The notes under the pieces: generated by a model
Database searches by the model: none
What the model was told of the DNA's origin: nothing
Seen by the model: only the letters and a program-made list of their open reading frames with translations
In this document: one piece after another, positions 5,616 through 48,197 of the stretch
How the letters are laid out: every line of letters starts with the position of its first letter
How positions within the stretch are numbered: the first letter of the stretch is position 1
Source: Hemiscyllium ocellatum
Taxonomy: Eukaryota
NCBI RefSeq assembly: GCF_020745735.1
Contig: NC_083409.1
Coordinates: 14,006,760 to 14,070,759 of the forward strand
Length of the DNA: 64,000 bases
Direction of reading: 5' to 3'
Program-made: the position numbers and the translations under genes

Positions 5616-5624
5616 GAGACAAAA

Positions 5625-5870
5625 GAAAGTGCAAATGCTGGAATCCAAGGTTGACAAGCAGGAGGCTGGGAGAACACAGCAAGCCAGGCAGCATCAGGAG
5701 GTGGAGAAATCAATGTTTTGGCTGTAATCCTTCTTCAGGAATGGGGGTGGGTTGGGAGGTGGGGGAATGATGGGGGAGCTGCAGATAAAGGGAGTAGTGG
5801 GGGGCAGGGTGGTGAGATGGGGATAGGTGAAGGTAGGTAGAGGATTGGTTGATGGGAGGGATGAATACAA
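5625..5870 (-). mobile_element. Penelope-like element terminal fragment (copy ~20717-20962)
   Basis: Similar to the end of the Penelope-like element at 15144 (GCTGG..AACACAGCAAG.CAGGCAG...CTTCTTCAG). Confidence 0.55.
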
Positions 5871-6876: not shown

Positions 6877-6890
6877 CCAGCAGATGGCGT
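6877..6890 (+). promoter_or_regulatory. CTCF-type motif 1
   Basis: CCAGCAGATGGCGT matches CCASYAGRKGGCRS at 13/14. Confidence 0.5.
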
Positions 6891-7459
6891 CTTTGCCTTT
6901 GCCAGCCTCAGGACAGTGCTCCAGTGTCTGGAGTGGGGCTTGAAACCTGCAGGTTCAGGTGACAGTGTTATCACTGAACCCATCTATTCTTTTCTGGGAT
7001 GTGGGAGTCACTGGCAAGACCAGCATTTGTTCCCCATCCCTACCTGTCCTGAAACTGAGTGGCTTCTTTAGCCTTTTAAATGGCAGGTAAGGGTCAGCCA
7101 CATTACTGGAGTGCTGTTTTGTACATTCTGTGATACATGGAGACTCTGTCAGTATTGGGTATCGCAAGGTATGTTCCCTCCATTGAACACTTTCCAACAC
7201 ACTCTCTCCATCTTTCTTTACTCCTTATTGACTCTTCTACAATTGTCCCTGTTCCCCCAACCCGCCCCGGTCCCAGAGGGATTGATGGCCGGAGTTCATG
7301 ACCCCGCACTGTGTGAAGGTTGGTGTGAAGTGAGGCCAGTGTGTTGGAGATTGGGCTCCTGCCTCAGGACCAGGTGTTGGGGCCTGTTCAACAATCTGCA
7401 CATTGTCCTTTTCCTCTTTCTGAATGAACTGGATCAAGTTGCAGTAATGAGCTGGCGAC

Positions 7460-8577
7460 AAGGTGTCTTGTCTAAAATGTTTCCAGCATTGGGCACAGAA
7501 CTGGCTGAGTAGGAGGAGACAGAGGGCAGTGACGGGGGATGGTTTTCAGAATGGAGGGCTGTGACTCGTGGTTTCCACAGGGAACTCTGCTGTATATGGT
7601 CTACATAAATGATTTGGAGGAAAGCGTAGCTGGTCTAATTAGTAATTTTACAATTGATACAAAGATTGGTAGAAGTGCAGAGAATGAGAAGGATTATCTA
7701 GGATATGGCAGGATAGAGAAGTTGGATGCTTGGACAGAAAAATGGCAGGTGTAGTTTAATCCAGACAAATGTGAGGTGATGCATTTTGAAAGGTGATGTA
7801 CAGGTGGGAATTATACAGTGAATGACAGAATCCTTTGGAGTATTGATATGCAGAGGGATCTGGGTGTGTATGTTCACAGATCACTGAAGGTGCCAGCACA
7901 GGGAGGTAAGGCAGTAAAAAAGGCTGATGGCCTGGTTGCCTTCATTGGAAGGGGCATTGAGTGTAAGGACAGACAAGTTATGCTGCAGCTTTATAGAACT
8001 TTAGTTTGGCCACACTTGGAATAGTGCACACAGTTCTGGTTGCATAGAACTGCACACAGTCCAAAAAGAAGGATGTGGATGTTTTGAAGACAGTGCAGAA
8101 AATGTTTACCAGGATATTGTCTGGTATGGGGGAATTGTAGTTCTGAAGAAAGGTTGGAGAGACTGAGTTTGTTTTCACTGGAATGCAGGAAAATGAGGTG
8201 CGTCCTGATAGAAGTTTACAGAATGGGATAGGCAGAGTGGAAATAATGAGACTTTTTCCCAGGGTGGAGGGGGTCAAATACTAGGGGACGCAGGTTCAAG
8301 GTGCAGGGGTTTGGGGGAATTCATTGTAAAGAGGTGTACAAACCAAGTATTTCACACAGAGGAAGTTGACTACCTGGAACACACAGCCAGAGGAGGGGGT
8401 GGAAGCAGACACAATAGAAGTATTCAAGAAATTCCTGCACTAATGCATGAATAGGAAGGGAATAGAGGGATATGAATCCTGTCGATGAAGATAGTTTCAG
8501 TATAGAAGGGCAAAATGTATCAGCACAGGCTTGGAGGGCCGAAGGGCCTGTTCCTGTGCTGTATTGTCCCTTGTTCT
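7460..8577 (+). mobile_element. Degenerate CR1 RT-3' fragment (copy ~22548-23670)
   Basis: VTRGVPQG, INDLEES, QRDLGVYVHRSLKV and LYRTLVWPHLE motifs with frameshifts. Confidence 0.85.
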
Positions 8578-8999
8578 TTGGTCCCTGCTGTTGAATTGGA
8601 TTCTCGGGAGCCAGCTCCATATGAAGAGCCTGTTCTCATTCTTTTGTTGGAGTTCATGGGGCAGCTGCTGCTTCCTTGTTACGTCACTGATCAAACCAAC
8701 AATGGGGAAAGCCTCTTGATATTTTAAATACACTGTCTGCAGGAAAATGTTTGGCTGAGGTTTTAATATTGTTTAATAAGATAATGACATCAATACACCA
8801 GTGTTCTTTACGGCTGGGAGCATTTAACATCATAGTCCTTGTTTTAAGTGGACTCTCACTCATGATAATACAGTTTTCAATGTTTCTCTCCCTTTATGTG
8901 TTACGAAGAGATTTGCCAACATGTTTTGGTGAGGACAGTGCATCTTCATTGGAGGATTGGAAGATGATATCTTCAGGACACACACACTAAACAACCCCA

Positions 9000-10090
9000 C
9001 CACCCTGTGGCCGACCATTTCAACTCCCCATCCACTTGCTAAGGATATGCAAGTCCCTAGGCCTACTCCACCGCCAAATTGAAGCCATCTAACAACTGGA
9101 GGAAGAACACCACATCTTCCACCTTGAGACCCTCCAATGACACGGAATGAATGTTATAGAGTCATAGAGTCATAGAGATGTACAGCATGGAAATAGACCC
9201 TTCAGTCCAACCCGTCCATGCCGACCAGATATCCCAACCCAATCTAGTCCCACCTGCCAGCACCCGCCCATCTCCCTCCAAACCCTTCCTATTCATATAC
9301 CCATTCAAATGCCTCTTAAATGTTGCAATTGCACCAGCCTCCACCACATCTTCTGGCAGCTCATTCCATACACATACCACCCTCTGCGTGAAAAAGTTGC
9401 CCCTTAGGTCTCTTTTGTATCTTTCTCCTCTCACCCTAAACCTATGCCCTCTAGTTCTGGACTCCCCAACCACTGGGAAAAGATGTTGTCTATTTATCCT
9501 ATCCATGCCCTTCGTAATTTTGTAAAACTCTATCAGGTTATCACTCAGCCTCTGATGCTCCAGGGAAAACAGCACCAGCCTGTTCAGCCTCTCCCTGTAG
9601 CTCCAATCTTCCAACCCTGGCAACATCCTTGTAAATCTTTTCTGAACCCTTTCAAGTTTCACAACATCTTTCCGATAGGAAGGAGACCAGAATTGCATGC
9701 AATATTCCAGCAGTAGCCTAACCAATGTCCTGTACAGCCGCAACATGACCTCCCAACTCCTGTACTCAATACTCTGAATGTTGATGTTACTTGTTTCCTC
9801 ATCTCCACTCCCCCAGCTTATCCCAGATCCAACCCTCCAACTCGGCACCACCCTTTTGAACTGTCCTACCTGTCCATCTTCCTTCCCACCTATCCACTCC
9901 ACCCTTCACTCTGACCTATCACTGTCACCCCCCACCTCCACGTACCTATTGCAATCTTCATTACATTTTCGCCAGCCCCAATTCCCTCCTATTTATCTCT
10001 CCGACTCCTCACTCCCTCCTCTCCATTCCTGATGAAGAGCTTATGCTCAAAACGTCGACTCTCCTGCTCCAGGGATTCTGCCTAACCAGC
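9000..10090 (+). mobile_element. Penelope-like 3' fragment interrupted by a CR1 (copy ~24091-25183)
   Basis: PVADHFN-like GIY-YIG-domain tail and a TCCTGATGAAGAGCTTATGCTCAAAACGTCGAC end. Confidence 0.6.
9156..9774 (-). mobile_element. CR1 3' fragment with 8-bp target-site duplication (copy 24248-24867)
   Basis: ORF 9162-9902 has CR1 C-terminal motifs; TGAATGTT at 9148-9155 and 9775-9782. Confidence 0.9.
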
Positions 10091-10744
10091 GCTACATGAT
10101 TTCACTCTGTGCTGTGGTAACAGTGTGTTAAAGCCCAGTGCAGGTCATCCGTCATCTCAATCAGATCACAGGGTCTAAGGTTGGTCAGTAATGTCTGGCC
10201 CCAGAACAATAACACTGACTGACTGGAGACAACCCAGATCAAGTCCCAGTGAGAGTGTTATTGACCTTCACACTCAAAGCCCACCAAGGAGGTGGTTATT
10301 GTTAGTTTCAATGTTGCCACAGATTAAATTCTCCCAGAGACTCATAATTCATTCCAGATTTTAAACAAGGGAGGGATGTTGTGGGGAGACAGATGGGAAG
10401 GCATGGAGAGGAAACAAAAAGGAGAGAGAATTGCCCTTCTGTTACACTGTTCATGAGCTCAGGATGTTCAAAGATGTTTTACAGCTAATGGAGAAATTCC
10501 AAAGTCTAGTCATTGTTGTAATATGGGCGGGGGAATGACAGCTCCCCCGAACAGAAGGAATGCAAAAACTGCTATCACTATGAGAGTGGAAAGGTCGGGT
10601 GGAGACAATGACAGAGACACCCTCCACAGAGAGAGAGGGGAAAGTACGCAGACACATTTAAAACTGTATTAACACAAGTGAGAAATCAAACAAACACCCA
10701 CTTCATCATGAGTCTTCCTGCATTGTTGGTTTGAATCCAATTCA

Positions 10745-11765
10745 ACAGCAGGGACCAAAGAACAAGGAACTATACAGCACAGGAACAGGCCCTTCGGCCC
10801 TCCCAGCCTGTGTTGACACATTTTGCCCTTCCTCACCGAAACTGTATTCACCTACAGGATTCATATCCCTCTATTCCCTTCTTTTCCGTGTATTCATCCA
10901 GGTATTTCTTGAATGCTGCTATTGTGTCTGCTTCCACCACTTCCACTGGCAGCGTGTTCCAGCCCTCACCACCGTTTGTGTGAAATACTTACCTCACACA
11001 TCTGTTTTAATTCCCCACTGCACCCACCCACCCCCTCCCACACCTTGTACCTGTGTCCCCTAGTAACTGACCCCTCTACCCTGGGAAAATCCCTCATATC
11101 AGACAGCATTCTTGGTACATTTTTTCAGTACCCTCTCCAAAGCATCCACATCCTTCTGGTCATGGTGACCAGAACCATATGCAATATTCCAAGTATGGCC
11201 AAACTAAAGTTCAGTAAAGCTGCAGTATAACTTGTCTATCCTAATACTCAGTGCTCCTCCCAATGTAGCCAAGCCTGCCATTGCCTTTTTTACTACCTTA
11301 GGTGCTGCCACCATCAGTGATCTGTGAACATGTACATCCAGATCCCTCTGCAATTCAATACTCCAAAGGGTTCTGCCATTCACTGTGCAGGTATTCTGCC
11401 ACGTGCTTCATCTTTCAAAATGCATCATTTCACATTTATTTGGATTAAACTTCATCTGCCATTTTCTATCCATGCATCCAATTGATCTATGTCCTGCTGT
11501 ATCCTCTGATAATCTGATCATTAACTGCAACTCCAGCAATCTTTGTGGCATCCACAAACTCATGAATTAGACTAGCCATGTTTTCGTCCAAATCACTTAT
11601 GGAGACCATGGACAGCAAAGGTACCATCATTGATCCCTGTGAAACCCCACAAGACACAGCCCTCCATTCTGAAATCCATCCTTCCATCACTATGCTCTCT
11701 CCTCTGACACAGCCAGTTCTGTATCCAATGCTGGGAACATTTTAGACAAGACACCTTGTTTCCAG
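10745..11765 (-). mobile_element. Degenerate CR1 (inverted partner of 7460-8577; copy ~25838-26858)
   Basis: GVSQGSMMVPL, ISDLDEN and FVDATKI motifs on the minus strand. Confidence 0.8.
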
Positions 11766-12202
11766 ATCGTTACTGCAACTTGATCCAGTTCATTCAGAAA
11801 GAGACAAAGGACAATGTGCAGATTGTTGAACAGGCCCCTACACCTGGGCCTGAGGGAAGGGCCCAAGCTCCAACACACTACACATGAAATTTAAGACAGA
11901 TTGGGGTCATGAACTCTGTCCATATGTTCCTTTGGGACCGGAAAGGAGTGAGGAAATAGAGGCAATTGTAGAAGAGTCAATAAGGATTAAAGCAAGATGG
12001 AGAGCGCGTTTTGGAAAGGGATTAGTGGAGAAAATATACTTTTTGCCACCCAACGTTGACATAGTCTCCGTGTATCACATCATGAATAAAATAGCACACT
12101 GTGAGGACAATCAAAAGTTACACCAAAGTGCTTATTTTTGATATATCACAGCATGCAGAGCATTTTTATTGTAGTGCAATTAGGTATCCTGGTTCAAAAG
12201 AT

Positions 12203-12204
<2 letters not shown>

Positions 12205-12252
<48 letters not shown>

Positions 12253-12280
12253 GCTGTCTCTCTCTCTCTCTCTCTCTCTC
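12205..12280. repeat. (CT)n microsatellite (shorter copy 27298-27341)
   Basis: Read directly. Confidence 0.95.
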
Positions 12281-15143
12281 CTCGTTTGTACAGATCCAGC
12301 TGGTTCGATCCTCACAGAGCCCCAGTTTATTTGGACTGTTCAGTAATGTGGAAATGCCGATGGTGGACTGGGGTACACCTGATAAAGGAGCAGCGCTTTA
12401 GAAGCTTGTGATTTCAAATGAATCAGTTGGGCTAGAACCTGGTGTAGTGTGTCCTCTGACTTTGTATTGTTCAGGCACAGTGAAACAGCTGCTTTCTAGT
12501 TACTATGGAGGACTTGCACAGCTGCTGAAGACTATGGGTAATGACTCCTTCCATTAGCCGCAAACACACCAGTAGTCATTCCAGTGGATTCCAGTGGGAA
12601 TGACCAATCAGTTGCTTTGACTTAGTTCCCCAGTTAATCAGGACATGGCTGACCTGGAATACATTCTCCCTTTATCCTGTAAACCGTACTGCCCTGAGTA
12701 AATGGATATTGAAACCCAACCTCAACAGCTTTTTATTTTGGATTGAGGGTTCCAGATTTCCATCACTCTGTCGGAAAGAAATTTTCCTGAAATCGTCTGA
12801 ATTACAATTTTAACAACCCTCTTGTTCTGGACTCTGGGACCGGAAAAAACAATTTACATCAACACTGTTCATCACCTCTGGGGAAAAGTCTCACTGATGT
12901 AACCTGTTCTCTCTCATTACCAGTTTCTGATCTGAAGGTGACATGACAGGCTGGATACTGAGAGGGTGGATCCTGTTATCGAGCAGATGAGAACTGGAGG
13001 GCTGGTTTAACACAAACCAGTCTCCAGTTTAAAGGGAAGGAGGGGTTTTCTTGCTGAGGATTGATAGTCTGTGGAATTCTCTTCTCTACATGGGAATGGA
13101 GGTTCACTCATGGAGTTGGCACAAGGTTACAGTCGACAGATTTTTTTGATGAACAAGGCAATTAAGGATAATGGGAGGGGATGGGGAAGCAGAAAGTACG
13201 GGCGAGACCATAACCAGATGAGCAGTGATCTTCTTCATTGGCACAGCAGCTCCCAAAAGGCCTGCTCCTGCTCCTGGGCCCTATGTTCTGACAGAGGCTG
13301 CAGCAATTCTGGACCCCCATCTTTCCTTTGTCACTCACTGACAAAAATGTAATTTTAAAATGAAAATTATTTTTTTGAACAAGACCAACTCAATTCTTGT
13401 TGCAGTCATTTTCTTTGCTGGCTTTTAATTTCAACAGGGTTTCAGAAACACGTCATTTGCCTTATGTTGCAGTGGAGACAGACACAAGGCAGTGAGGCCT
13501 CAGAGAACACCGAGAGCTTTCACTCTGCACAACAAGGCTGTCAGTACAAGAATCTGGTGACAGGATTGTAGGGGGTTGTAAAGGAGAGAGTCACGGAGAA
13601 AAGAGACCTTATAGTTCAAAATAAAACCTCTTCCTATATTCCCACACTCTAATGAATTAATGTTAGAGGATTAGAAACCCAGAACGGTGAGAGTGTGCTG
13701 GCTCAGAGGCTAAAAGGCAGAGAGCAAGGAGCTGCATTATTCCTTCTCATTATTATTTCTGCTTCATCATTGGTGAGCTTCATATTTATTGCCCACCCCC
13801 AGTTGCTTGGACTAAGTTCTTTGCTGAACCAGATCATGGGGTCATTAAAAATGGATCATGTCACGGTGGGGCAGGAGTCACAGACCAGGCACCCTCGCCA
13901 AAAGAACATTTGTGAACATCACATTGAATTTCATGTCTTTTTTGTACAGGTTCCAGCGCCTTCCTTTCCAGGTATTACATGGCTCACCCCCGCCCTCTCC
14001 AGGACAATTGGGGAAAGGCAACGCCCGCTCTGGAGAAATCAGGAGAAATGATGTAAAATTAAAATGATTAAACTGGTGAGGCTTCAATTCATCTCTTTGG
14101 AAGACTGGACTCTCGGCCAGAAACAGAGCCATGACATGGGTGACCCTGGTTTGTCAGACTGAAAGGTGGAGTGTCCTTTGGATTGACACTGGGATCAGCA
14201 AAAAAATGAATTACACTCAAAGATCGAATAAACAGATATCAAAGTGGGTCACCAAACTGCAGAGTGCAGCACTTGCAGCTTCGTATCCCCATCTCTATCC
14301 TTGCTGTTGCCCTTCCCTTACTGTCCTGGAGAGGGCGGTGGTGAGCCATGGGTTTCTCAAAGAGGATCTGACAGAGGGACAAGGTCATGTCCTCGGCCTG
14401 AGCACAACTGTCTGACCTGCTGTGCTTTTCCAGCGCCACACTTTTCGACTCCGAGCAAACTATCCCTCAGGAGAATGAGCTGTGGCACATGGGAAAACGT
14501 GAGAGTGTGGGAAAGGAACCAGCAGCCTGGTCAGCCTGCAGAGGGGAAGAAACAGATTTGGTGAATGAAATGATATCCTTCTAAGCTGAAATACAGACTC
14601 AGGCTTTCAGAGCTACACAGTTTACATTGTTACTGACGGTGACTCCATGGGCAATGTTCCTGCTTCAGAGTCAAATGGTCATTGGATTGAACTCTGACAC
14701 AATGTTATGTATGGGATGTTCATTTAAAGCCCCACCAGCACCACCCAGACCCCAATCCTTCCACCTCAGGGGGCTCGACAAGGTCCCATTCTAAAAGAGA
14801 TTCCCTCGGGTATCCTGCTCAATATTCATCCAATGCCACCAAAACATATTTGTCTCATCATTCATTTGCTGATTTTGGGACCTCAGCATTTTGTCTTGTG
14901 AAGGTGATTGCACTGCACACGCAACTTTAAATATCCTGGGACAATTTAAAAAAAAACTGCACCCACAAGAGTTCTCTCTCCATTATCATGTAAAAGGGGA
15001 GCAATGAGCAAATGAAAATCCACACTGGAGGCAAACACGGAAGTTTCAGCTGAAAGGCTTTTTGCACCACGTTAACCTGCACCCTGGGCATTTCCTTCCA
15101 GTGTTCGAGATGGTTATCAGACTGGGATGGAGGCTTACAGGAG

Positions 15144-16965: not shown

Positions 16966-17954
16966 GGAGGCTGACAGATCACATGGAAATGTTTGGAAAA
17001 GGTTCACAAGGGCACAGTCCAGGCTTCCTGCAAATATCAGCCTTCCTTCTATTGTAGTGCTTCTTCATAGGAACTTCTCTCTGGCGGTTTCAAGTACACA
17101 TCCTCCATGGAAATATCACAGACTTTATTGAAATGGGATGAGCTGAAAGAAGAGAAGGAAATGGGAAGAATTAACCAGACAAGGGTGTGCATCAAGAGAG
17201 ATGGGAGTGTGTGGGAGACTCTGTGCCATTAAAAAATCCCAAAGGAGTTTCACAAGAAAAGCTCGAATCTTTACAAGGATATAACAGGGAGATGACTTAC
17301 TGACATCAAACAGGTTGGGTGTTAGGGACCCTGTGCCTCTGGTGCCTAACTCTATTTGAGACATTACAGTCAAGGATGGTTGATGTGTAAATAAAGGGTG
17401 ACTTGATGATGTGGAGTTATTTCATGATCAATGACCGGGGGCATAGATTTAAGAGAAATGGCTGAAAATTAAGAAGGAATATGAGGAAACACACTTTCGT
17501 GCAGTAGGTGGTGGTAATTTGTAACTTGCTTTCTGTAAGAATGGTTGAGGCAGAAGCTCTCCCATATCATTGAAGTATTTCGGTGTGCAGCTGTAATACC
17601 AAGGCACACAGGACTATGGACTGAGTGCTGGAACATGGAATTAGAATAGTGAGGTGGTTGTTTGACTGGCTTTGGCTCATTGGGCAGAAGGGTCCTGTTC
17701 TTGTAGACCTGTTGTAGACATCTGACTCTGCCAGGACTCCAGCAATGTGGCTGACCCTTACCTGACATTTGAAAGGCCCAGCAAGCCACTCAGTTTCAGG
17801 GCAGTTAGGGATGGGGAACAAATGCTGGTCTTGTCAGTGACACCCACATCCCAGGAAAGAATAGACGGCCTCAGTAACACAGTCACCTGAACCTGCAGGT
17901 TTCAAGCCCCACTCCAGACACTGGAGCACTATCCTGAGACTGGCAAACGTAAAG

Positions 17955-17968
17955 ACGCCATCTGCTGG
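17955..17968 (-). promoter_or_regulatory. CTCF-type motif 2
   Basis: Identical CCAGCAGATGGCGT on the minus strand. Confidence 0.5.
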
Positions 17969-21968: not shown

Positions 21969-21982
21969 CCAGCAGATGGCGT
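21969..21982 (+). promoter_or_regulatory. CTCF-type motif 3
   Basis: Identical CCAGCAGATGGCGT. Confidence 0.5.
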
Positions 21983-24900
21983 CTTTACCTTTGCCAGCCT
22001 CAGGACGGTGCTCCAGTGTCTGGAATGGGGCTTGAAACCTGCAGGTGCAGGTGACGGTGTTATCACTGAACCCATCTATTCTTTTCTGGAATGTGGGAGT
22101 CACTGGCAAGACCAGCATTTGTTCCCCATCCCTACCTGTCCTGAAACTGAGTGGCTTCTTTAGCCTTTTAAATGGCAGGTAAGGGTCAGCCACATTACTG
22201 GAGTGCTGTTTTGTACATTCTGTGATACATGGAGACTCTGTCAGTATTGGGTATCGCAAGGTATGTTCCCTCCATTGAACACTTTCCAACACACTCTCTC
22301 CATCTTTCTTTACTCCTTATTGACTCTTCTACAATTGTCCCTGTTCCCCCAACCCGCCCCGGTCCCAGAGGGATTGATGGCCGGTATTCATGACCCCGCA
22401 CTGTGTGAAGGTTGGTGTGAAGTGAGGCCAGTGTGTTGGAGATTGGGCTCCTGCCTCAGGACCAGGTGTAGGGGCCTGTTCAACAATCTGCACATTGTCC
22501 TTTTCCTCTTTCTGAATGAACTGGATCAAGTTGCAGTAAGAGCTGGCGACAAGGTGTCTTGTCTAAAATGTTTCCAGCATTGGGCACAGAACTGGCTGAG
22601 TAGGAGGAGACAGAGGGCAGTGATGGGGGGATGGTTTTCAGAATGGAGGGCTGTGACTCGTGGTGTTCCACAGGGAACTCTGCTGTATATGGTCTACATA
22701 AATGATTTGGAGGAAAGCGTAGCTGGTCTAATGAGGAATTTTACAATTGATACAAAGATTGGTAGAAGTGCAGAGAATGAGAAGGATTATCTAGGATATA
22801 GCAGGATAGAGATGCTTGGACAGAAAAATGGCAGGTGTAGTTTAATCCAGACAAATGTGAGGTGATGCATTTTGGAAGGTGATGTACAGGTGGGAATTAT
22901 ACAGTGAATGACAGAATCCTTTGGAGTATTGATATGCAGAGGGATCTGGGTGTGTATGTTCACAGACCACTGAAGGTGCCAGCACAGGGAGGTAAGGCAG
23001 TAAAAAAGGCTGATGGCCTGGTTGCCTTCATTGGAAGGGGCATTGAGTGTAAGGACAGACAAGTTATGCTGCAGCTTGAAAGAACTTTAGTTCGGCCACA
23101 CTTGGAATAGTGCACACAGTTCTGGTTGCATAGAACTGCACACAGTCCAAAAGAAGGATGTGGATGTTTTGAAGACGGTGCAGAAAATGTTTACCAGGAT
23201 ATTGTCTGGTATGGGGGGATTGTAGTTCTGAAGAAAGGTTGGAGAGACTGGATTTGTTTTCACTGGAATGCAGGAAAATGAGGTGTGTCCTGATAGAAGT
23301 TTACAGAGTTGTGAATGGGATAGGCAGAGTGGAAATAATGAGACTTTTTCCCAGGGTGGAGGGGGTCAAATACTAGGGGACGCAGGTTCAAGGTGCAGGG
23401 GTTTGGGGGAATTCATTGTAAAGAGGTGTACAAACCAAGTATTTCACACAGTGGAAGTTGACTACCTGGAACACACAGCCAGAGGAGGGGGTGGAAGCAG
23501 ACACAATAGAAGTATTCAAGAAATTCCTGCACTAATGCATGAATAGGAAGGGAATAGAGGGATATGAATCCTGTCGATGAAGATAGTTTCAGTATAGAAG
23601 GGCAAAATGTATCAGCACAGGCTTGGAGGGCCGAAGGGCCTGTTCCTGTGCTGTATTGTCCCTTGTTCTTTGGTCCCTGCTGTTGAATTGGATTCTCGGG
23701 AGCCAGCTCCATATGAAGAGCCTGTTCTCATTCTTTTGTTGGAGTTCATGGGGCAGCTGCTGCTTCCTTGTTACGTCACTGATCAAACCAACAATGGGGA
23801 AAGCCTCTTGATATTTTAAATACACTGTCTGCAGGAAAATGTTTGGCTGAGGTTTTAATATTGTTTAATAAGATAATGACATCAATACACCAGTGTTCTT
23901 TACGGCTGGGAGCATTTAACATCATAGTCCTTGTTTTAAATGGACTCTCACTCATGATAATACAGTTTTCAATGTTTCTCTCCCTTTATGTGTTATGAAG
24001 AGATTTGCCAACATGTTTTGGTGAGGACAGTGCATCTTCATTGGAGGATTGGAAGATGATATCTTCAGGACACACACACTAAACAACCCCACCACCCTGT
24101 GGCCGACCATTTCAACTCCCCATCCACTTGCTAAGGATATGCAAGTCCCTAGGCCTACTCCACCGCCAAATTGAAGCCATCTAACAACTGGAGGAAGAAC
24201 ACCACATCTTCCACCTTGAGACCCTCCAATGACACGGAATGAATGTTATAGAGTCATAGAGTCATAGAGATGTACAGCATGGAAATAGACCCTTCAGTCC
24301 AACCCGTCCATGCCGACCAGATATCCCAACCCAATCTAGTCCCACCTGCCAGCACCCAGCCCATCTCCCTCCAAACCCTTCCTATTCATATACCCATTCA
24401 AATGCCTCTTAAATGTTGCAATTGCACCAGCCTCCACCACATCTTCTGGCAGCTCATTCCATACACATACCACCCTCTGCGTGAAAAAGTTGCCCCTTAG
24501 GTCTCTTTTGTATCTTTCTCCTCTCACCCTAAACCTATGCCCTCTAGTTCTGGACTCCCCAACCACTGGGAAAAGATGTTGTCTATTTATCCTATCCATG
24601 CCCTTCGTAATTTTGTAAAACTCTATCAGGTTATCACTCAGCCTCTGATGCTCCAGGGAAAACAGCACCAGTCTGTTCAGCCTCTCCCTGTAGCTCCGAT
24701 CTTCCAACCCTGGCAACATCCTTGTAAATCTTTTCTGAACCCTTTCAAGTTTCACAACATCTTTCCGATAGGAAGGAGACCAGAATTGCATGCAATATTC
24801 CAGCAGTAGCCTAACCAATGTCCTGTACAGCCGCAACATGACCTCCCAACTCCTGTACTCAATACTCTGAATGTTGATGTTACTTGTTTCCTCATCTCCA

Positions 24901-27307
24901 CTCCCCCAGCTTATCCCAGATCCAACCCTCCAACTCGGCACCACCCTTTTGAACTGTCCTACCTGTCCATCTTCCTTCCCACCTATCCACTCCACCCTTC
25001 ACTCTGACCTATCACTGTCACCCCCCACCTCCACGTACCTATTGCAATCTTCATTACATTTTCCCCAGCCCCAATTCCCTCCTATTTATCTCTCTGACTC
25101 CTCACTCCCTCCTCTCCATTCCTGATGAAGAGCTTATGCTCAAAACGTCGACTCTCCTGCTCCAGGGATTCTGCCTAACCAGCGCTACATGATTTCACTC
25201 TGTGCTGTGGTAACAGTGTGTTAAAGCCCAGTGCAGGTCATCCGTCATCTCAATCAGATCACAGGGTCTAAGGTGGGTCAGTAATGTCTGGCCCCAGAAC
25301 AATAACACTGACTGACTGGAGACAACCCAGATCAAGTCCCAGTGAGAGTGTTATTGACCTTCACACTCAAAGCCCACCAAGGAGGTGGTTGTTGTTAGTC
25401 TCAATGTTGCCACAGATTAAATTCTCCCAGAGATTCATAATTCATTCCAGATTTTAAACAAGGGAGGGATGTTGTGGGGAGACAGATGGGAAGGCATGGA
25501 GAGGAAACAAAAAGGAGAGAGAATTGCCCTTCTGTTACACTGTTCATGAGCTCAGGATGTTCAAAGATGTTTTACAGCTAATGGAGAAATTCCAAAGTCT
25601 AGTCATTGTTGTAATATGGGCGGGGGAATGACAGCTCCCCCGAACAGAAGGAATGCAAAAACTGCTATCACTATGAGAGTGGAAAGGTCGGGTGGAGACA
25701 ATGACAGTGACACCCTCCACAGAGAGAGAGGGGAAAGTACGCAGACACATTTAAAACTGTATTAACACAAGTGAGAAATCAAACAAACACCCACTTCATC
25801 ATGAGTCTTCCTGCATTGTTGGTTTGAATCCAATTCAACAGCAGGGACCAAAGAACAAGGAACTATACAGCACAGGAACAGGCCCTTCGGCCCTCCCAGC
25901 CTGTGTTGACACATTTTGCCCTTCCTCACCGAAACTGTATTCACCTACAGGATTCATATCCCTCTATTCCCTTCTTTTCCGTGTATTCATCCAGGTATTT
26001 CTTGAATGCTGCTATTGTGTCTGCTTCCACCACTTCCACTGGCAGCGTGTTCCAGCCCTCACCACCGTTTGTGTGAAATACTTACCTCACACATCTGTTT
26101 TAATTCCCCACTGCACCCACCCATCCCCTCCCACACCTTGTACCTGTGTCCCCTAGTAACTGACCCCTCTACCCTGGGAAAATCCCTCATATCAGACAGC
26201 ATTCTTGGTACATTTTTTCAGTACCCTCTCCAAAGCATCCACATCCTTCTGGTCATAGTGACCAGAACCATATGCAATATTCCCAGTGTGGCCAAACTAA
26301 AGTTCAGTAAAGCTGCAGTATAACTTGTCTATCCTAATACTCAGTGCTCCTCCCAATGTAGCCAAGCCTGCCATTGCCTTTTTTACTACCTTCGGTGCTG
26401 CCACTCTCAGTGATCTGTGAACATGTACACCGAGATCCCTCTGCATTTCAATACTCCAATGGATTCTGCCATTCACTGTGCAGGTATTCTGCCACGTGCT
26501 TCATCTTTCAAAATGCATCATTTCACATTTATTTGGATTAAACTTCATCTGCCATTTTCTATCCACGCATCCAATTGATCTATGTCCTGCTGTATCCTCT
26601 GATAATCTGATCATTAACTGCAACTCCAGCAATCTTTGTGGCATCCACAAACTCATGAATTAGACTAGCCATGTTTTCGTCCAAATCACTTATGGAGACC
26701 ATGAACAGCAAAGGTCCCATCATTGATCCCTGCAAAACCCCACAAGACACAGCCCTCCATTCTGAAATCCATCCTTCCATCACTATGCTCTCTCCTCTGA
26801 CACAGCCAGTTCTGTATCCAATGCTGGGAACATTTTAGACAAGACACCTTGTTGCCAGATCGTTACTGCAACTTGATCCAGTTCATTCAGAAAGAGACAA
26901 AGGACAATGTGCAGATTGTTGAACAGGCCCCTACACCTGGGCCTGAGGGAGGAGCCGAAGCTCCAATACACTACACATGGAACTTAAGACAGAGTGGGGT
27001 CATGAAGTCTGTCCATATGTTCCTTTGGGACCGGAAAGGAGTGAGGAAATAGAGGCAATTGTAGAAGAGTCAATAAGGATTAAAGCAAGATGGAGAGCGC
27101 GTTTTGGAAAGGGATTAGTGGAGAAAATATACTTTTTGCCACCCAACGTTGACATAGTCTCCGTGTATCACATCATGAATAAAATAGCACACTGTGAGGA
27201 CAATCAAAAGTTACACCAAAGTGCTTATTTTTGATATATCACAGCATGCAGAGCATTTTTATTGTGGTGCAATTAGGTATCCTGGTTCAAAAGATGTTCT
27301 CTCTCTC

Positions 27308-27344
<37 letters not shown>

Positions 27345-29384
27345 GTTTGTACAGATCCAGCTGGTTCGATCCTCACAGAGCCCCAGTTTATTTGGACTGT
27401 TCAGTAATGTGGAAATGTCGATGGTGGACTGGGGTACACCTGATAAAGGAGCAGCGCTTCAGAAGCTTGTGATTTCAAATGAATCAGTTGGGCTAGAACC
27501 TGGTGTAGTGAGTCCTCTGACTTTGTATTGTTCAGGCACAGTGAAACAGCTGCTTTCTAGTTACTATGGAGGACTTGCACAGCTGCTGAAGACTATGGGT
27601 AATGACTCCTTCCATTAGCCGCAAACACACCAGTAGTCATTCCAGTGGATTCCAGTGGGAATGACCAATCAGTTGCTTTGACCTAGTTCCCCAGTTAATC
27701 AGGCCATGGCTGACCTGGAATACATTCTCCCTTTGTCCTGTAAACCGTACTGCCCTGAGAAAATGGATATTGAAACCCAACCTCAACAGCTTTTTATTTT
27801 GGATTGAGGGTTCCAGATTTCCATCACTCTGTCGGAAAGAAATTTTCCTGAAATCGTCTGAATTACAATTTTAACAACCCTCTTGTTCTGGACTCGGACT
27901 GGAGAAAGCAATTTACATCAACACTGTTCATCATCTCTGGGGAAAAGTCTGACTGATGTAACCTGTTCTCTCTCATTAACAGTTTCTGATCTGAAGGTGA
28001 CATCACAGGCTGGACACTGAGAGGGTGGTTCCTGTTATCGGGCAGACGAGGACTGGAGGGCAGGTTTAACACAAACCAGTCTCCAGTTTAAAGGGAAGGA
28101 GGGATTTTCTTGCTGAGGGTTGATAGTCTGTGGAATTTTCTTCTCTACATGGGGATGGAGGTTCACTCATGGAGTTGGCACAAGGTTACAGTCGACAGAC
28201 TTTTTGATGAACAAGGCAATTAAGGATAATGGGAGGGGGTGGGGAAGCAGAACGTACGGGCGAGACCATAACCAGATGAGCAGTGATCTTCTTCATTGGC
28301 ACAGCAGCTCCCAAAAGGCCTGCTCCTGCTCCTAGGTCCTATGTTCTGACAGAGGCTGCAGCAATCCTGGACCCCCATCTTTCCTTTGTCACTCACTGAC
28401 AAAAATATAATTTTAAAATGAAAATTATTTTTTTGAACAAGACCAACTCAATTCTTGTTGCAGTCATTTTCTTTGCTGGCTTTTAATTTCAACAGGGTTT
28501 TAGCAACACGTCATTTGTCTTATGTTGCAGTGGAGACAGACACAAGGCAGTGAGGCCTCAGAGAGCACCGAGAGCTTTCACTCTGCACAACAAGGCTGTC
28601 AGCACAAGCATCTGGTGACAGAATTGTAGGGGGTTGAAAAGGAGAGAGTCACGGAGAAAAGAGACCTTATAGTTCAAAATAAAACCTCTTCATATATTCC
28701 CACACTTTAATGAATTAATGTTAGAGGATTAGAAACCCAGAACGGTGAGAGTGTGCTGGCTCAGAGGCTAAAAGGCAGAGAGCAAGGAGCTGCATTATTC
28801 CTTCTCATTATTATTTCTGCTTCATCATTGGTGAGCTTCATAAATATTGCCCACCCCCAGTTGCTTGGACGAAGTTCTTTGCTGAGCCAGATCATAGGGT
28901 CATTAAAAATGGATCATGTCACGGTGGGGCAGGAGTCACAGACCAGGCTCCCTCGCCAAAAGAACATTTGTGGACATCACATTGAATTTCATGTCTTTTT
29001 TTGTACAAATTCCAGCGCCTTCCTTTCCAGATATTACATGGCTCACCACCGCCCTCTCCAGGACAATTAGGGGAAGGCAACCAATAACCAACACGTCAAC
29101 GCCCGCCCCATCCCGGGAGAAATCAGGAGAAATGATGTAAAATTAAAATGATCAAATTGGTGAGGCTTGAATTCATCTCTTTGAAAGACTGGACTCTCGG
29201 TCAGAAACAGAGCCATGACATGGGTGAACCTGGTTTGTCAGATTGAAAGGTGGAGAGTCCTTTGGATTGACGCTGGGATCAGCAAAAAAATGAATTGCAC
29301 TCAAAGATTGAACAAACAGCTATCAAAGTGGGTCACCAAACTGCAGAGTACAGCACTTGCAGCGACGCGAGCAACGCGTCCCCA

Positions 29385-29692
29385 CCACGGTGGCACAGTG
29401 GTTAGCACTGCTGTCTCACAGTGCCTGAGACCCGGGTTCAATTCCCACCTCAGGCGACTGACTGTGTGGAGTTTGCACATTCTCCCCGTGTCTGCGTGGG
29501 TTTCCTCCGGGTGCTCCGGTTTCCTCCCACAGTCCAAAGATGTGCGGGTCAGGTGAATTGGCCGTGTTAAATTGCCCGTAGTGTTAGGTAAGGGACAAAT
29601 GTAGGGGTATGGGTGGGTTGCGCTTCGGCGGGTCGGTGTGGACTTGTTGGGCCGAAGGGCCTGTTTCCACACTGTAAGTAATCTAATCTAAT
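29385..29692 (+). mobile_element. tRNA-derived SINE (HE1-like), unit B only
   Basis: Same family; absent at the matching site in unit A (~14290). Confidence 0.92.
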
Positions 29693-30565
29693 CTCTCTCC
29701 TTGCTGTTGCCCTTCCCTAACTGTCCTGGAGAGGGCGGTGGTGAGCCATGAGTTTCTCGAAGAGAATCTGACAGAGGGACAAGGTCATGTCCTCGGCCTG
29801 AGCACAACTGCCTGGCCAGCTGTGCTTTTCCAGCACCACACTTTTTGACTCTGAGTAAACTATCCTTCAGGAGAATGAGCTGTGGCACATGGGAAAACCT
29901 GGGAGTATTGGAAAGGCATCAGCAGCCTGGTCAGCCTGCAGAGGGGCAGAAACAGATTTGATGAATGAGATGATATCCTTTCAGAGCCACACAGTTTACA
30001 TTGTTACTGACGGTGACTCCATGGGCAATGCTCCTGCTTCAGAGTCAAATGGTCATTGCATTGAAAGCCACCTCAGAAATGAGAACACAGAATCCAGGTT
30101 GAGACTGCAGTGAACTCTGACACAATATTATGTATGGGATGTTCATTTAAAGCCCCACCAGCACCACCCAGACCCCAATCCCTCCACCTCAGGGGGCTCG
30201 ACAAGATCCCATTCTGAAGAGATTCCCTCAGGCATCCTGCTCAATATTCAACTAATGCCACCAAAAGGATTTGTCTCATCATTCGTTTGCTGATTTTGGG
30301 ATCTCAGCATTTTGTCTTGTGAAGGTGATTGCACTGTGCAGGCAGCTTTAAATATCCTGGGACGATTACAAAAAAACACTGCACCAACAAGTGTTCTTTC
30401 TTCCTGTCACATAACAGGGGAGTAAATCAGTAACTGAAAATCCACACTGAAGGCAAACACTGAAGCTTCAGCTGAAAGGCTTTTTGCACCACGTTAACCT
30501 GCGCCCTGGGCATTTCCTTCCAGTGTCCGAGATCGTTACCAGGCTGGGATGGAGGCTTACAGGAG

Positions 30566-32075
30566 GCTGGAAGAACACAGCAAGTCAGGCAGAATCTGGA
30601 GGTGGAGCAGTCAACATTTCGGGTATAACCCTTCTTCAGAACTGCAGGTGGGGGTAAGGGGAGCTGCAAATCAAGGTGGGATCGGTTGTTTGCGTGGGTG
30701 GAGGGGAATGGTGGAGTGGAAGGTATTGATGGATGAACACAGGTAGAGGGTTGGAAGTGCTTAGTCGATGGGAGGAATGAATCCATTTGATGGCTGGAAG
30801 GGTGGGTCCATAAGTGGAATAGAATGGAGGAGGGGGACTGGAAAGGGAGTCGAAAGTTGGAAAAGGGAGACTTTTTGAAACTGGAGAACTCAATGTTGAT
30901 TCCTTTGGGTTGTAAGCAACCCTGGGCAAAAGATAATTATTTGTTCCTCCAATTTGCAGTCTGATTGCTTATGGTAATGGAGGAGGCAGAGGATAGTCAT
31001 GTCAGAGAGGGAATAGGAAGGAGAATTGAAATAGGCAGTGACTGGGAGGCCAGGTCAGCCTTTGTGAGCCTGGCTGAGATGCTCATCAAAACATGTCCTT
31101 AGTTTATGTTTGGTCTCACCGATGCAGAGAAGACCACAACGGGTGCACCAGATACAATAAACTAGGTTGGAGGAGAGGCAGGTGAACCTCTGTCTGACCT
31201 GGAAGGACTGGGGCCCTGGATGGAAATGACAGGGTTTGGTGTGTGGGCAGGTTTTGCATCTTTTACAGTTGCAGGGGAAGGTACCAGGGTTTTGTTGGGG
31301 GAGGAGGGGGTAGGTGTGAAGTGTGGTGAAAACCAAGGATTGGCAAAGGGAACAGTCCTTGTGGAAGGCAGAGAGGGGTGGGGAGGGGAAGATGTTCTTG
31401 ATAGTGGGGTCGAGCTGGAGTTGTCAGAATTGTTTGAGGATGATACGTTGGATGCGGAGATTGATTGGACGTAAGGTGAAGACAAGGGGGACCCTGTCTC
31501 TATTGCATTTTGGAGGGGAGTGTTTAAATTTGGGGAGCAGAGAATGGAGGAGGTGCGGTGGAGGGCTTTCTGGATGGCAGAGGTGGGAAAAGTACATTGT
31601 TCAAAATAAGTGGACATCTGGGACACTTGGGAGGGGAGCATCTCCTCGTTCGAGCAGATATTACGGAGATGGAAGAATTGGGAAAACGGGGTGGTGTTCT
31701 TGCAGGATACTGGTTGGGAGGAGGTGTTGACCAGGTAGTTGTGTGAGTCTGTGGATTTACAGTAAATGTCTGTTCCTAGACTGTCACCGGAGATGGAAAT
31801 GGGGCGGTCAAGAAAGGAGAGGGATTTGTCCAAGATAGACTACGTGAATTTGAGGGCAGGTTGGAAGTTGTTAGCAAAGTTGATGAACAGCTCCAGTTCA
31901 GCCTGAGTGCAGGATGCAGTACTGATGCAGTCACTGATGTAATGGTGGAAGATTTGGGGAACGGTGCCTGTGCATGTACTGGTGAGGTGTTGTTTGATGT
32001 AGCCGACAACAAGCAGACATAGCTGTGACCCATGGCCACCCACTGGATTTGGAGGAAATGGGAAGAGTTGAAGAA
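30566..32075 (-). mobile_element. Degenerate Penelope-like retroelement, unit B
   Basis: FLDRPISISGD...PFSQFFHLRNICS and PGTFPCNCKRCKTC...LVYCIWCTRCGLLCIGETKHKLRTCFDEHL (GIY-YIG). Confidence 0.9.
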
Positions 32076-33063
32076 AGCTGACAGATCACATGGAAATGTT
32101 TGGAAAAGGTTCACAAGGACACAGTCCAGGCTTCCTGCAAATATCAGCCTTCCTTCTGTTGAAGTGCTTCTTCACAGGAGCTTCTCTATGGCGGTTTCAA
32201 GTACACATCATCCGTGGAAATATCACAGACTTTCTGAAATGGAATGAACTGAAAGAAGAGAAGGAAATGGGAAGAATTAACCAGACAAGGGTGAGCATCA
32301 AGAGAGATGGGAGTGTGTGGAAGACTCTGTGCCATTAAAAAATCCCAAAGGAGTTTCACAAGAAAAGCTCGAATCTTTACAAGGATATAACAGGGAGATG
32401 ACTTACTGACATCAAACAGGTTGGGTGTTAGGGACCCTGTGCCTCTGGTGCCTAACTTTATATGAGACAATACAGTCAAGGATGGTTGATGTGTAAATAA
32501 AGGGTGACTTGATGATGTGGAGTTATTTCATGATCAATGACCGCGGGCATAGATTTAAGGGAAATGGCAGAAGATTAAGAGGGAATGTGAGGAAACATGC
32601 CTTCATGCAGAAGGTGGTGGTAATTTGTAACTTGCTTTCTGTAAGGGTAGTTGAGGCAGAAGCTCTCCCATAACATTGACGTACTTTGATGTGCAGCTGT
32701 GATGCCAAGGTTTACAGGGCTGCGGGCCAACTGCTGGAACATGGAATTAGAATAGTGAGGTGGTTGTTCGGCTGGCTTTGGCTCATTGGGCCGAAGGGCC
32801 TTGTTCTTGTAGACCTGTTGTAGATGTCTGACTCTGCCAGGACTCCAGCAATGTGGCTGACCCTTACCTGCCATTTGAAAGGCCGAGCAAGTCACTCAGT
32901 TTCAGGGCAGTTAGGGATGGGGAACAAATGCTGGTCTTGTCAGTGACACCCACATCCCAGGAAAGAATAGACAGCCTCAGTGGTAACACCGTCACCTGAA
33001 CCTGCAGGTTTCAAGCCCCACTCCAGACACTGGAGCACTATCCTGCGGCTGGCAAAGGCAAAG

Positions 33064-33077
33064 ACGCCATCTGCTGG
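33064..33077 (-). promoter_or_regulatory. CTCF-type motif 4
   Basis: Identical CCAGCAGATGGCGT on the minus strand. Confidence 0.5.
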
Positions 33078-48169: not shown

Positions 48170-48197
48170 GGTTTTTGTATGGCTCTGTGTCACTGTG
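48170..48197 (-). other. V recombination signal sequence, 12-bp spacer
   Basis: Minus strand CACAGTG-ACACAGAGCCAT-ACAAAAACC; exact consensus heptamer and nonamer. Confidence 0.98.

What the first reader, a model, noticed from the sequence alone, without database searches (positions are those of the whole stretch)
6877..33077. Four identical CTCF-type motifs (+,-,+,-) between kappa clusters: candidate inter-cluster insulator
Seen: CCAGCAGATGGCGT at 6877(+), 17955(-), 21969(+) and 33064(-), each in a ~220-bp core. The inverted copies of the core are ~94% identical while adjacent LINE-derived arm sequence is ~75% (by eye). The tandem duplication creates a divergent pair 4 kb apart (17955/21969). 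Established: CTCF sites confine RAG scanning in mammalian Ig loci (IGCR1 divergent pair, Igk Cer/Sis, 3' CBEs), and shark Ig genes rearrange mostly within a cluster. Inference: this array may insulate neighbouring shark clusters from each other's RSSs and enhancers. I know of no description of this in sharks.
Basis: partly seen in the sequence, partly recalled or inferred. Interest (0 to 1): 0.75.

Follow-up and report, generated by a model that had tools for sequence, protein, structure and literature searches.

The report
Duplicated CTCF-like site behind shark kappa cluster
Four identical CTCF-type motifs behind a bamboo-shark antibody light-chain gene are real, but they are four copies of one ancestral site made by an inverted and then a tandem duplication and kept alike by gene conversion, so they are only weak evidence for an insulator.

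Summary
CCAGCAGATGGCGT occurs exactly four times (6877+, 17955-, 21969+, 33064-), each inside a ~224-bp island that is 96% alike between inverted copies, against ~80% in the same arms.

The four are not independent. One ancestral site lies 4.1 kb 3' of the only kappa C exon in the window. An old inverted duplication of that 3' flank, then a 15.1-kb tandem duplication, produced the +,-,+,- array.

The island is not a dispersed repeat, but its extra identity does not show selection:
- Since the tandem duplication it has changed as fast as its flanks (7.2% vs 7.4%).
- Two variants are shared across the neighbouring inverted pair, the mark of gene conversion.
- A second motif-less island exists in the same arms.

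Other limits on the insulator reading:
- A motif of this quality is expected about once per 64 kb by chance.
- Two other kappa loci of Chiloscyllium punctatum lack the element.
- The native copy points away from its cluster.
- Related species keep the core stretch no better than its flank.
- CTCF binding is untested.

An insulator role stays possible (about 0.2). The scan noted similar CTCF-type pairs near kappa clusters elsewhere in this genome (s1-191592, s1-203492, s1-213650).

The parts
6877..6890 (+). CTCF-type motif, copy A1 (orphan inverted flank copy, tandem unit 1)
   Evidence: Exact match. It fits CCASYAGRKGGCRS at 13 of 14 positions.
17955..17968 (-). CTCF-type motif, copy B1 (tandem duplicate of the native copy, no C exon beside it)
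21969..21982 (+). CTCF-type motif, copy A2 (tandem unit 2). It forms the divergent pair with B1, 4.0 kb apart.
33064..33077 (-). CTCF-type motif, copy B2. This is the native copy, 4.1 kb 3' of the kappa C exon, on the same strand as the cluster and pointing away from it.
6747..6970 (+). High-identity island (A1). Its equivalents are 21839-22062 (+), 17875-18098 (-) and 32984-33207 (-).
   Evidence: There are 4 fixed A/B differences in 223 columns, against 143 in 882 in the flank. Profile, alignment.
5966..7116 (+). Inverted-repeat arm segment F2 (A1). Its copies are 21058-22208 (+), 17732-18885 (-) and 32838-33973 (-).
   Evidence: Self-BLAST gives about 80% over 1.15 kb.
6990..7116 (+). Fragment of an abundant dispersed shark repeat that abuts the core on its right
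   Evidence: nhmmer hits to profile positions 306-437 only: 6 in other loci and 1 further significant one in the window. The matching depth bin is high.
2753..5614 (+). Rest of the inverted copy of the C 3' flank (2753-3718 and 5332-5614), split by a LINE insertion with an RT ORF at 3715-5250
   Evidence: It is collinear with 36207-35003 on the other strand at 86-89%. RVT_1 hit.
35003..36207 (-). Native C 3' flank segment F1. It contains the second identity island (35400-35900, paired with 3101-3600).
4036..19127 (.). Tandem unit 1 of the 15.1-kb duplication
   Evidence: It matches 19128-34215 at 97.7% over the first 10.2 kb and 87.6-92.4% over the rest. Each unit has its own private SINE insertion.
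19128..34215 (.). Tandem unit 2
7111..8603 (+). LINE-derived part of the left palindrome arm. Its partner is 10733-12097 (-).
   Evidence: 77-80% inverted match
37168..37496 (-). Kappa C exon of the only intact cluster. The transcript 3' end is near 36575.
   Evidence: Translation. It is 99% identical to C. punctatum and H. ocellatum kappa C. RNA-like run depth.
47685..48500 (-). J segment (about 47685-47722, 23-spacer RSS heptamer at 47723) and V exon (about 48198-48500, 12-spacer RSS from 48197)

Best explanation
The four motifs are four paralogous copies of a single ancestral site. That site sits in a low-copy stretch of about 300-440 bp, not detectably TE-derived, in the 3' flank of a kappa light-chain cluster. 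The native copy B2 is 4.1 kb behind the C exon.

Shown: an old inverted duplication of that flank (arms now about 80% alike) made copy A. A later 15.1-kb tandem duplication doubled both A and B, giving +,-,+,-.

Shown: the 224-bp island around the motif is much more alike between A and B than the arms are, yet it has diverged at the flank rate since the tandem duplication. It also carries two variants shared between the neighbouring inverted copies A2 and B1 but not with their tandem twins.

Inferred: the island is a gene-conversion tract between inverted repeats, not a footprint of long-term purifying selection. The array as such is a by-product of duplication.

Inferred: the motif is good enough that CTCF, or YY1 or an E-box factor, may bind it. 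Nothing here shows that it does, or that three of the four copies matter.
For: Duplication history:
- Self-BLAST and repeat maps show 2753-7116 collinear with 36207-32838 in inverted orientation.
- 7111-8603 pairs with 10733-12097.
- The tandem units are 4036-19127 and 19128-34215, each with a private SINE insertion, so the duplication is real and not an assembly artefact.

Rate test:
- Fixed A/B differences are 4/223 in the core against 143/882 in the flank (p = 8e-11).
- Within-pair differences are 16/223 against 65/882 (7.2% vs 7.4%, p = 1.0).
- The ratio of fixed to within-pair differences differs between core and flank (p = 3e-5).
- The A pair has 6 differences in the core where 2.8 are expected neutrally and 1.4 if one copy were constrained (P = 0.003).

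Conversion marks:
- At sites 6807 and 6895, A2 = B1 and A1 = B2. Between 0.06 and 0.14 such sites are expected by parallel mutation (P = 0.002-0.008). There are none in 882 flank columns.
- A second island (3101-3600 vs 35400-35900, 94-100% per 50 nt) lies in the same arms without a CTCF motif. In the diverged paralogue L002 it is only about 73%, like its surroundings.
- The 44-nt invariant run around the motif is not unusual (P = 0.30).

Against: - The island centres roughly on the best CTCF-consensus match in the window, which conversion alone does not predict.
- The native copy B2 has only 3 derived changes where 6.8 are expected (P = 0.09), so constraint on that one copy is not excluded.
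- Summed contig depth over the island is 4-7 times that of the adjacent low-copy bin in two species' runs. This hints that more copies elsewhere keep the island than keep its flank, but the tool warns that depth is not copy number.
- An earlier unchecked note of this scan (s1-191592) reports a conserved CTCF-type element 3' of about a third of kappa C exons in this genome.
- The conversion evidence rests on two sites.
Confidence: 0.55

Rival explanations
1. The element is a working CTCF boundary or anchor of the kappa cluster. The ancestral site 3' of C binds CTCF, and the duplicated copies add a multi-site, two-way barrier: two convergent 11-kb loops and one divergent pair. The barrier limits cohesin-driven RAG scanning and enhancer reach between neighbouring clusters.
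For: - The motif fits the consensus at 13 of 14 positions and gives the only such matches in 64 kb.
- It scores 14.1 of 27.3 bits with an approximate MA0139.1 matrix, above the threshold of 8 used in skate (PMC10115646).
- The CTCF orientation code and loop extrusion are documented in a cartilaginous fish.
- The element belongs to the cluster's 3' flank and is not a dispersed repeat.
- The island of identity peaks around the motif.
- B2 shows slightly fewer derived changes than expected.
- Unchecked notes of this scan report similar sites at other kappa clusters.
Against: - There are no binding data.
- The copies have evolved at the neutral rate since duplication, and the island is explained by conversion.
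- One ancestral motif of this quality is expected by chance in a window of this size.
- The element is absent within about 9.5 kb 3' of C in L001 and L002.
- B2 faces away from its own cluster, and the loops it would form enclose only TE-rich DNA.
- Word sharing with related species is similar for the core stretch and its flank: 0.31 vs 0.18-0.23 in two species, 0.56 vs 0.64 in the likely source species.
Confidence: 0.2
2. The island is part of a 3' regulatory module (an enhancer or silencer) of the kappa cluster. The sequence CAGATGGCG would then act as a YY1 (NF-E1) or E-box site rather than as a CTCF site, by analogy with the mammalian Ig kappa 3' enhancer.
For: - It lies 4.1 kb 3' of C.
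- GCAGATGGCGTC matches the YY1 consensus CAAGATGGCGGC at 9 of 12 positions, including the ATGGCG core (consensus from my own knowledge). Four of the seven ATGGCG/CGCCAT cores in the window are these copies.
- YY1 was cloned as a binder of the Ig kappa 3' enhancer (PMC3918653).
- E2A-type E-boxes CACCTG and CAGGTG flank the island in all four copies.
Against: - E2A boxes are common here (0.89 per kb).
- No PU.1/IRF, octamer or Ets motifs occur in the island.
- No contigs cover the island in the RNA-like run, though enhancers need not be transcribed.
- The lack of recent constraint is the same as above.
- Absent from two other kappa loci.
Confidence: 0.1
3. The core is simply part of a dispersed transposable element that happens to carry a CTCF-like motif, like B2 SINEs in mouse. 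Its four copies would then be TE copies.
For: - The 130 bp to the right of the core (6990-7116) and the stretch 6151-6548 to its left are fragments of abundant repeats.
- Another dispersed repeat in the window gives CTCF-PWM hits.
Against: - nhmmer finds the core (profile positions 1-305) only in the four copies, across 64 kb of window and 96 kb of other loci.
- There is no significant similarity to the local SINEs.
- The island's depth bin is 20-190 times lower than the bins of true dispersed repeats.
- Collinear flanks show segmental duplication, not transposition.
- A search of predicted proteins with the ORF that crosses the core found nothing.
Confidence: 0.05

Closest known systems
CTCF-binding elements of mammalian antigen-receptor loci (IGCR1 CBE1/2, Igk Cer/Sis, IgH 3' CBEs)
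   Same: The core motif is of the same type. The element lies beside Ig gene segments, behind the constant region. Oppositely oriented sites occur a few kb apart.
   Different: Binding, insulation and any effect on recombination are unknown here. The pairings arose by recent duplication rather than as conserved architecture. The native site faces away from its cluster, whereas the IgH 3' CBEs face the locus (my own knowledge). The element is absent from other kappa clusters.
Palindromes and inverted segmental duplications homogenised by arm-to-arm gene conversion (for example the mammalian sex-chromosome palindromes)
   Same: There are inverted arms with a spacer, a mosaic of near-identical patches in otherwise diverged arms, and variants shared against the duplication tree.
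   Different: The arms here are old and mostly diverged (about 80%). Only two short patches (224 and about 500 bp) are homogenised, and the palindrome has since been tandemly duplicated.
TE-borne CTCF sites (mouse B2 SINE, and similar cases)
   Same: A CTCF-like motif is multiplied by copying of DNA rather than by independent origin.
   Different: The copying here was segmental duplication. The core itself shows no TE hallmarks and is low-copy.
Mammalian Ig kappa 3' enhancer with its YY1/NF-E1 site
   Same: It lies a few kb 3' of C kappa, has an ATGGCG-type YY1 core and has E-boxes nearby.
   Different: There is no PU.1/IRF composite, no sequence homology and no activity data.

Membership tests
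CTCF-binding insulator / loop anchor | Match to the CTCF core motif | tested here: met
   The motif fits CCASYAGRKGGCRS at 13 of 14 positions, and these are the only such matches in the window. It scores 14.1 bits with MA0139.1 as recalled from memory. About 1.3 sites of that score are expected per 64 kb by chance.
CTCF-binding insulator / loop anchor | CTCF (and cohesin) occupancy in vivo | not testable with these tools
   No ChIP or CUT&Tag data could be reached. The runs found are DNA runs or Ig-expressing RNA-like runs.
CTCF-binding insulator / loop anchor | Sequence constraint above the neutral flank | tested here: not met
   Divergence since duplication is 7.2% in the core and 7.4% in the flank. 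The A pair changed faster than expected. The invariant run around the motif has P = 0.30. Word shares across species are similar for the core stretch and the flank. For B2 alone the result is inconclusive (P = 0.09).
CTCF-binding insulator / loop anchor | Recurrent position between the units to be insulated | tested here: inconclusive
   Only one cluster lies in the window. The native copy is 4.1 kb 3' of C. The element is absent within about 9.5 kb 3' of C in L001 and L002, and L003 is uninformative because of gaps. Earlier scan notes claim it occurs at about a third of clusters; this is unchecked.
CTCF-binding insulator / loop anchor | Enhancer-blocking or recombination-confining activity | not testable with these tools
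   This needs an experiment.
Inverted duplication with gene conversion | Collinear inverted paralogous arms | tested here: met
   2753-8603 pairs with 36207-32838 and 12097-10733.
Inverted duplication with gene conversion | Patches of identity with a younger coalescence than the arms | tested here: met
   There are 4 fixed differences in the core where 36 are expected, with normal within-pair divergence. There is a second patch at 3101-3600.
Inverted duplication with gene conversion | Variants shared against the duplication tree | tested here: met
   At sites 6807 and 6895, A2 = B1 and A1 = B2 (P = 0.002-0.008). This rests on two sites only.
Dispersed repeat (TE-borne motif) | Many dispersed, diverged copies and TE hallmarks | tested here: not met
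   Only the four copies are found in 160 kb searched. There is no similarity to local SINEs. Depth is moderate.
Ig light-chain 3' enhancer | Cluster of B-lineage factor motifs 3' of C | tested here: inconclusive
   The island has E-boxes and a YY1-like core but no PU.1/IRF, octamer or Ets motifs.

The most novel reading that the evidence does not exclude
Hemiscylliid sharks carry a lineage-specific CTCF anchor as part of the duplicating unit of a subfamily of kappa clusters. On this reading, each duplication of a cluster flank adds a new boundary, and the present array (two copies facing the cluster, two facing away) acts as a two-way barrier that keeps RAG scanning and enhancers inside one minilocus. 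Conversion between copies would then be a side effect of breaks at bound CTCF sites.
Probability: 0.15. Interest if true: 0.7.

Novelty: new member of a known kind. Interest (0 to 1): 0.3.

Why it matters
How sharks keep V(D)J recombination inside one of many near-identical miniloci is an open question. A per-cluster CTCF boundary would be a simple answer, and it would push the CTCF/RAG-scanning logic back to the base of jawed vertebrates.

This window does not settle it. It shows that the most eye-catching evidence (several identical motifs in alternating orientation, and a highly conserved core) can arise from duplication plus gene conversion alone. Claims of this kind in shark Ig loci therefore need orthologous comparisons or binding data. 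The rate test used here, fixed differences against differences since duplication, is a cheap filter for the other CTCF-pair findings of this scan.

Tried and rejected
- **Core as a dispersed repeat.** Rejected. Only the adjoining 6990-7116 and 6151-6548 are abundant-repeat fragments.
- **Rfam families in the window.** None.
- **Pfam on ORFs around the element.** Only a LINE reverse transcriptase at 3715-5250.
- **The 76-aa ORF across the core as a handle to fetch other copies.** No protein in the collection.
- **Exact 26-mer of the motif region in metagenome and prokaryote genome collections**, looking for contaminating shark DNA. No hits.
- **Fetching kappa loci from chromosome-scale shark assemblies** (C. 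punctatum GCA_047496795.1, H. ocellatum GCA_020745735.1, S. torazame). The tool gave no DNA because the files are too large. Only three loci of the older C. punctatum assembly were readable, and one of them (L003) is gapped exactly where the core could be.
- **Cross-species conservation from reads.**
  - An organism C contig covers 32922-33267 at 93.4% identity. Other pieces of the flank range from 84% to 99%, so there is no excess.
  - Word shares are similar for the core stretch and the flank.
  - Depth was not used as copy number, as the tool advises.
- **Literature.** No paper on CTCF in shark Ig clusters was found in the searchable library.


Full report
**1. The observation**

CCAGCAGATGGCGT occurs exactly four times, at 6877(+), 17955(-), 21969(+) and 33064(-). 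No match is expected in shuffled sequence. These are also the only places in the 64 kb that fit the CTCF core consensus CCASYAGRKGGCRS with at most one mismatch (the consensus is from my own knowledge). Start-to-start spacings of 15,092 and 15,109 nt between same-strand copies already show that a tandem duplication is involved.

**2. What surrounds it**

The window holds a single kappa light-chain cluster, all on the minus strand:
- a V exon with a 12-spacer RSS (heptamer from 48197);
- a J segment (about 47685-47722) with a 23-spacer RSS;
- about 10 kb further on, the C exon at 37168-37496.

tblastn with 53 shark and other light chains finds no other Ig exon, apart from a short leader-like match at 58.2 kb. 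The C region is 99% identical to kappa chains annotated in Chiloscyllium punctatum and Hemiscyllium ocellatum, so the genome is a hemiscylliid (bamboo or epaulette type) shark. An RNA-like run covers 36575-37550 very deeply, which places the transcript's 3' end near 36.6 kb.

**3. Duplication history**

Self-comparison gives a consistent picture. The 3' flank of the C exon, read away from the gene, consists of:
- F1 (36207-35003);
- a stretch of repeats;
- F2 (33973-32838), which carries the motif (copy B2, 4.1 kb from the C exon).

The same order appears inverted on the left of the window:
- 2753-3718 and 5332-5614 correspond to F1, interrupted by a LINE whose RT ORF is 3715-5250;
- 5966-7116 corresponds to F2 (copy A1).

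Next to A1, the LINE-derived 7111-8603 pairs in inverted orientation with 10733-12097. The simplest model is one old palindromic duplication: a left arm 2753-8603, a spacer 8603-10733, and a right arm later split by 5.6 kb (12098-17731). Arm identity is 77-80% away from the two islands.

Later, the segment 4036-19127 was duplicated in tandem (19128-34215), doubling A and B into A1, B1, A2 and B2. Each unit has its own private ~310-bp SINE (15767-16084 only in unit 1; 29386-29694 only in unit 2). The duplication is therefore real and not an assembly artefact.

Orientation, using the forward/reverse convention from my own knowledge:
- A1>...<B1 and A2>...<B2 are convergent pairs 11 kb apart. They enclose only TE-rich DNA.
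- B1<...>A2 is the divergent pair, 4.0 kb apart.
- B2, the only copy still next to a C exon, is a reverse motif lying to the left of its cluster, so it points away from the cluster. The two A copies point towards it.

**4. The identity island**

A four-way alignment shows 70-86% identity between A and B over 5969-6746 and 92-100% over 6747-6946, peaking at the motif. In ungapped columns, fixed A-versus-B differences are 4 of 223 in 6747-6970 against 143 of 882 in the rest of the arm (p = 8e-11).

**5. Is the core a dispersed repeat?**

No.
- A profile of the four copies finds nothing else for positions 1-305 (window about 6683-6990) in the window or in 96 kb of other shark kappa loci.
- Positions 306-437 (6990-7116) hit several times (6 in those loci, 1 further significant hit in the window), so they are a fragment of an abundant repeat.
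- The stretch 6151-6548 on the other side is also an abundant repeat (very high depth; family copy in L003).
- The core shows no significant similarity to the local tRNA-type SINEs.
- Its depth bin is 20-190 times below those of true dispersed repeats.
- Rfam finds nothing.

The core is thus a low-copy stretch lying between two repeat fragments.

**6. Does the island show selection?**

This is the crux, and the answer is no. If the island had been kept by purifying selection during the long time in which the arms collected 16% fixed differences, it should also have changed slowly since the tandem duplication. It has not.
- A1 vs A2 plus B1 vs B2 differences are 16 in 223 columns (7.2%) in the core and 65 in 882 (7.4%) in the flank (p = 1.0).
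- The ratio of fixed to within-pair differences differs strongly between core and flank (p = 3e-5).
- The A pair has 6 differences where 2.8 are expected neutrally, and 1.4 if one copy were constrained (P = 0.003).
- From 6759 to 6913 there is not a single fixed difference, yet nine sites vary among the four copies, two of them within 5-7 nt of the motif.
- At 6807 and 6895, on either side of the motif, A2 shares its base with B1 and A1 with B2. This contradicts the duplication tree. Only 0.06-0.14 such sites are expected from parallel mutation (P = 0.002-0.008), and none occurs in 882 flank columns. A2 and B1 are the inverted neighbours 3.7 kb apart.
- The 44-nt run without any variation that includes the motif is not longer than expected from the density of variable sites (P = 0.30).

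Together this is the signature of gene conversion between inverted repeats: one event that homogenised A and B around the time of the tandem duplication, and at least one later event between A2 and B1.

Two further points agree:
- The same arms contain a second, larger island (3101-3600 vs 35400-35900; 94-100% per 50 nt against 58-88% around it) with no CTCF-type motif. In the diverged paralogous cluster L002 that stretch is only about 73% alike, no better than its surroundings.
- The tandem units themselves are unevenly alike (97.7% over 10.2 kb, 87.6-92.4% over the rest), which shows a recombinationally active region.

What cannot be excluded is constraint on the native copy alone. B2 has 3 derived changes where 6.8 are expected (P = 0.09).

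**7. Motif strength in context**

- The four copies score 14.1 of a possible 27.3 bits.
- Eight sites in the window reach that score, where 1.3 are expected in first-order Markov simulations.
- The eight collapse to two or three independent sites.
- The other family (TGTCCTGGAGAGGGCGG at 13988-, 14322+, 29047-, 29722+), which scores higher, lies in sequence of a dispersed-repeat type.

One ancestral site of this quality in 64 kb is therefore about what chance gives.

The same letters also fit other factors. GCAGATGGCGTC matches the YY1 consensus at 9 of 12 positions, including the ATGGCG core (my own knowledge), and contains the E-box CAGATG. E2A-type boxes flank the island in all copies but are common in the window (0.89 per kb). 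YY1 was first cloned as a binder of the mouse Ig kappa 3' enhancer (PMC3918653), so a 3' regulatory module is a fair rival reading.

**8. Association with kappa clusters and other species**

Chromosome-scale shark assemblies could not be read. Three kappa loci of the older C. punctatum assembly could.
- L002 has a gap-free 3' flank of 9.5 kb that is collinear with F1, but it has neither F2 nor any CTCF-consensus match.
- L001 (9.4 kb of flank) also lacks the element. It has one weak motif with a mismatch in the GG core.
- L003 is gapped or cut where the element could lie.

The element is therefore not a general part of kappa clusters.

Public runs of four or five related species hold words of the region.
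- For the 513-bp core stretch (6604-7116), the shares are 0.56 (likely source species), 0.31-0.33 and 0.31.
- For the low-copy flank 6171-6603, they are 0.57-0.66, 0.14-0.20, 0.23 and 0.20-0.29.
- With about 45 words each, this is no clear excess for the core.
- A contig of organism C covers 32922-33267 at 93.4% identity, within the range of the other flank pieces (84-99%).
- The summed depth over the island is several times that of the adjacent low-copy bin in two species, and a quarter to a half of that over the C exon. This is compatible with the earlier, unchecked note s1-191592 that a conserved CTCF-type element follows about a third of kappa C exons in this genome. The tool itself warns against reading depth as copy number, and I could not check that the element of that note is this one.

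**9. Verdict**

The functional reading is possible: cartilaginous fish have the CTCF orientation code (PMC10115646), the motif is decent, and the element belongs to a cluster flank. But it is not supported by what made it look striking. Four identical copies are one site copied twice, and the 'conserved core' is best explained by gene conversion.

My estimates:
- 0.55 that the array is a duplication and conversion by-product without a selected role;
- 0.20 that it is a working CTCF boundary;
- 0.10 that it is a YY1/E-box type 3' regulatory module;
- 0.05 that it is TE-borne;
- the remainder unassigned.

I found no paper on CTCF sites in shark Ig clusters in the searchable library, so the idea itself remains new. 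This scan has already raised it at other places of the same genome (s1-191592, s1-203492, s1-213650).

Noticed in passing
window 3101-3600 and 35400-35900: This is a second island of 94-100% identity between the inverted copies of the C 3' flank, 1.3-1.8 kb behind the C exon, with no CTCF-type motif. The surrounding arm is 58-88% alike. In the diverged paralogous cluster L002 the stretch is only about 73% alike. It is either a conversion tract or a young regulatory element.
   Followed up: partly
window 13988(-), 14322(+), 29047(-), 29722(+): TGTCCTGGAGAGGGCGG scores as high as or higher than the finding's motif with an approximate CTCF matrix. It lies in sequence resembling an abundant shark repeat ('...GAGAAGGTGGTGGTGAGC...'). 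Weaker relatives sit at 17498(+) and 32604(+), about 450 bp from B1 and B2. Repeat-borne CTCF-like hits are therefore common here.
   Followed up: partly
window 15767-16084, 29386-29694, 42524-42834: A ~310-bp tRNA-type SINE has copies 94-98% alike. Each tandem unit carries a private insertion at a different place, so the family was active after the tandem duplication.
   Followed up: partly
window 4036-19127 vs 19128-34215: The two tandem units are 97.7% alike over the first 10.2 kb but only 87.6-92.4% over the last 4.8 kb. Either the duplication happened in two steps or the first part was homogenised later.
   Followed up: no
window 37496-47685: The J-C intron of this kappa cluster is about 10 kb and full of repeats. 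From my own knowledge, that is long for a shark light-chain cluster.
   Followed up: no
proteins P0001 and P0002: Shark kappa constant regions (79-84% identical to this one) are filed in public databases as proteins of Aeromonas veronii and Salmonella enterica, on contigs of 507 and 990 nt. These look like bacterial assemblies contaminated with shark DNA.
   Followed up: no
window 58217-58323 (+): There is a short match (19 aa, 95%) to the first residues of a C. punctatum kappa gene model, on the strand opposite to the cluster, with no V exon behind it.
   Followed up: no
window 318-2695: This is a copy (68-78%) of part of the J-C intron (38491-40220) in the same orientation, joined at about 2750 to the inverted C 3' flank. 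It is the remnant of a neighbouring or broken cluster whose C exon would lie left of the window. It agrees with note s1-203590.
   Followed up: partly
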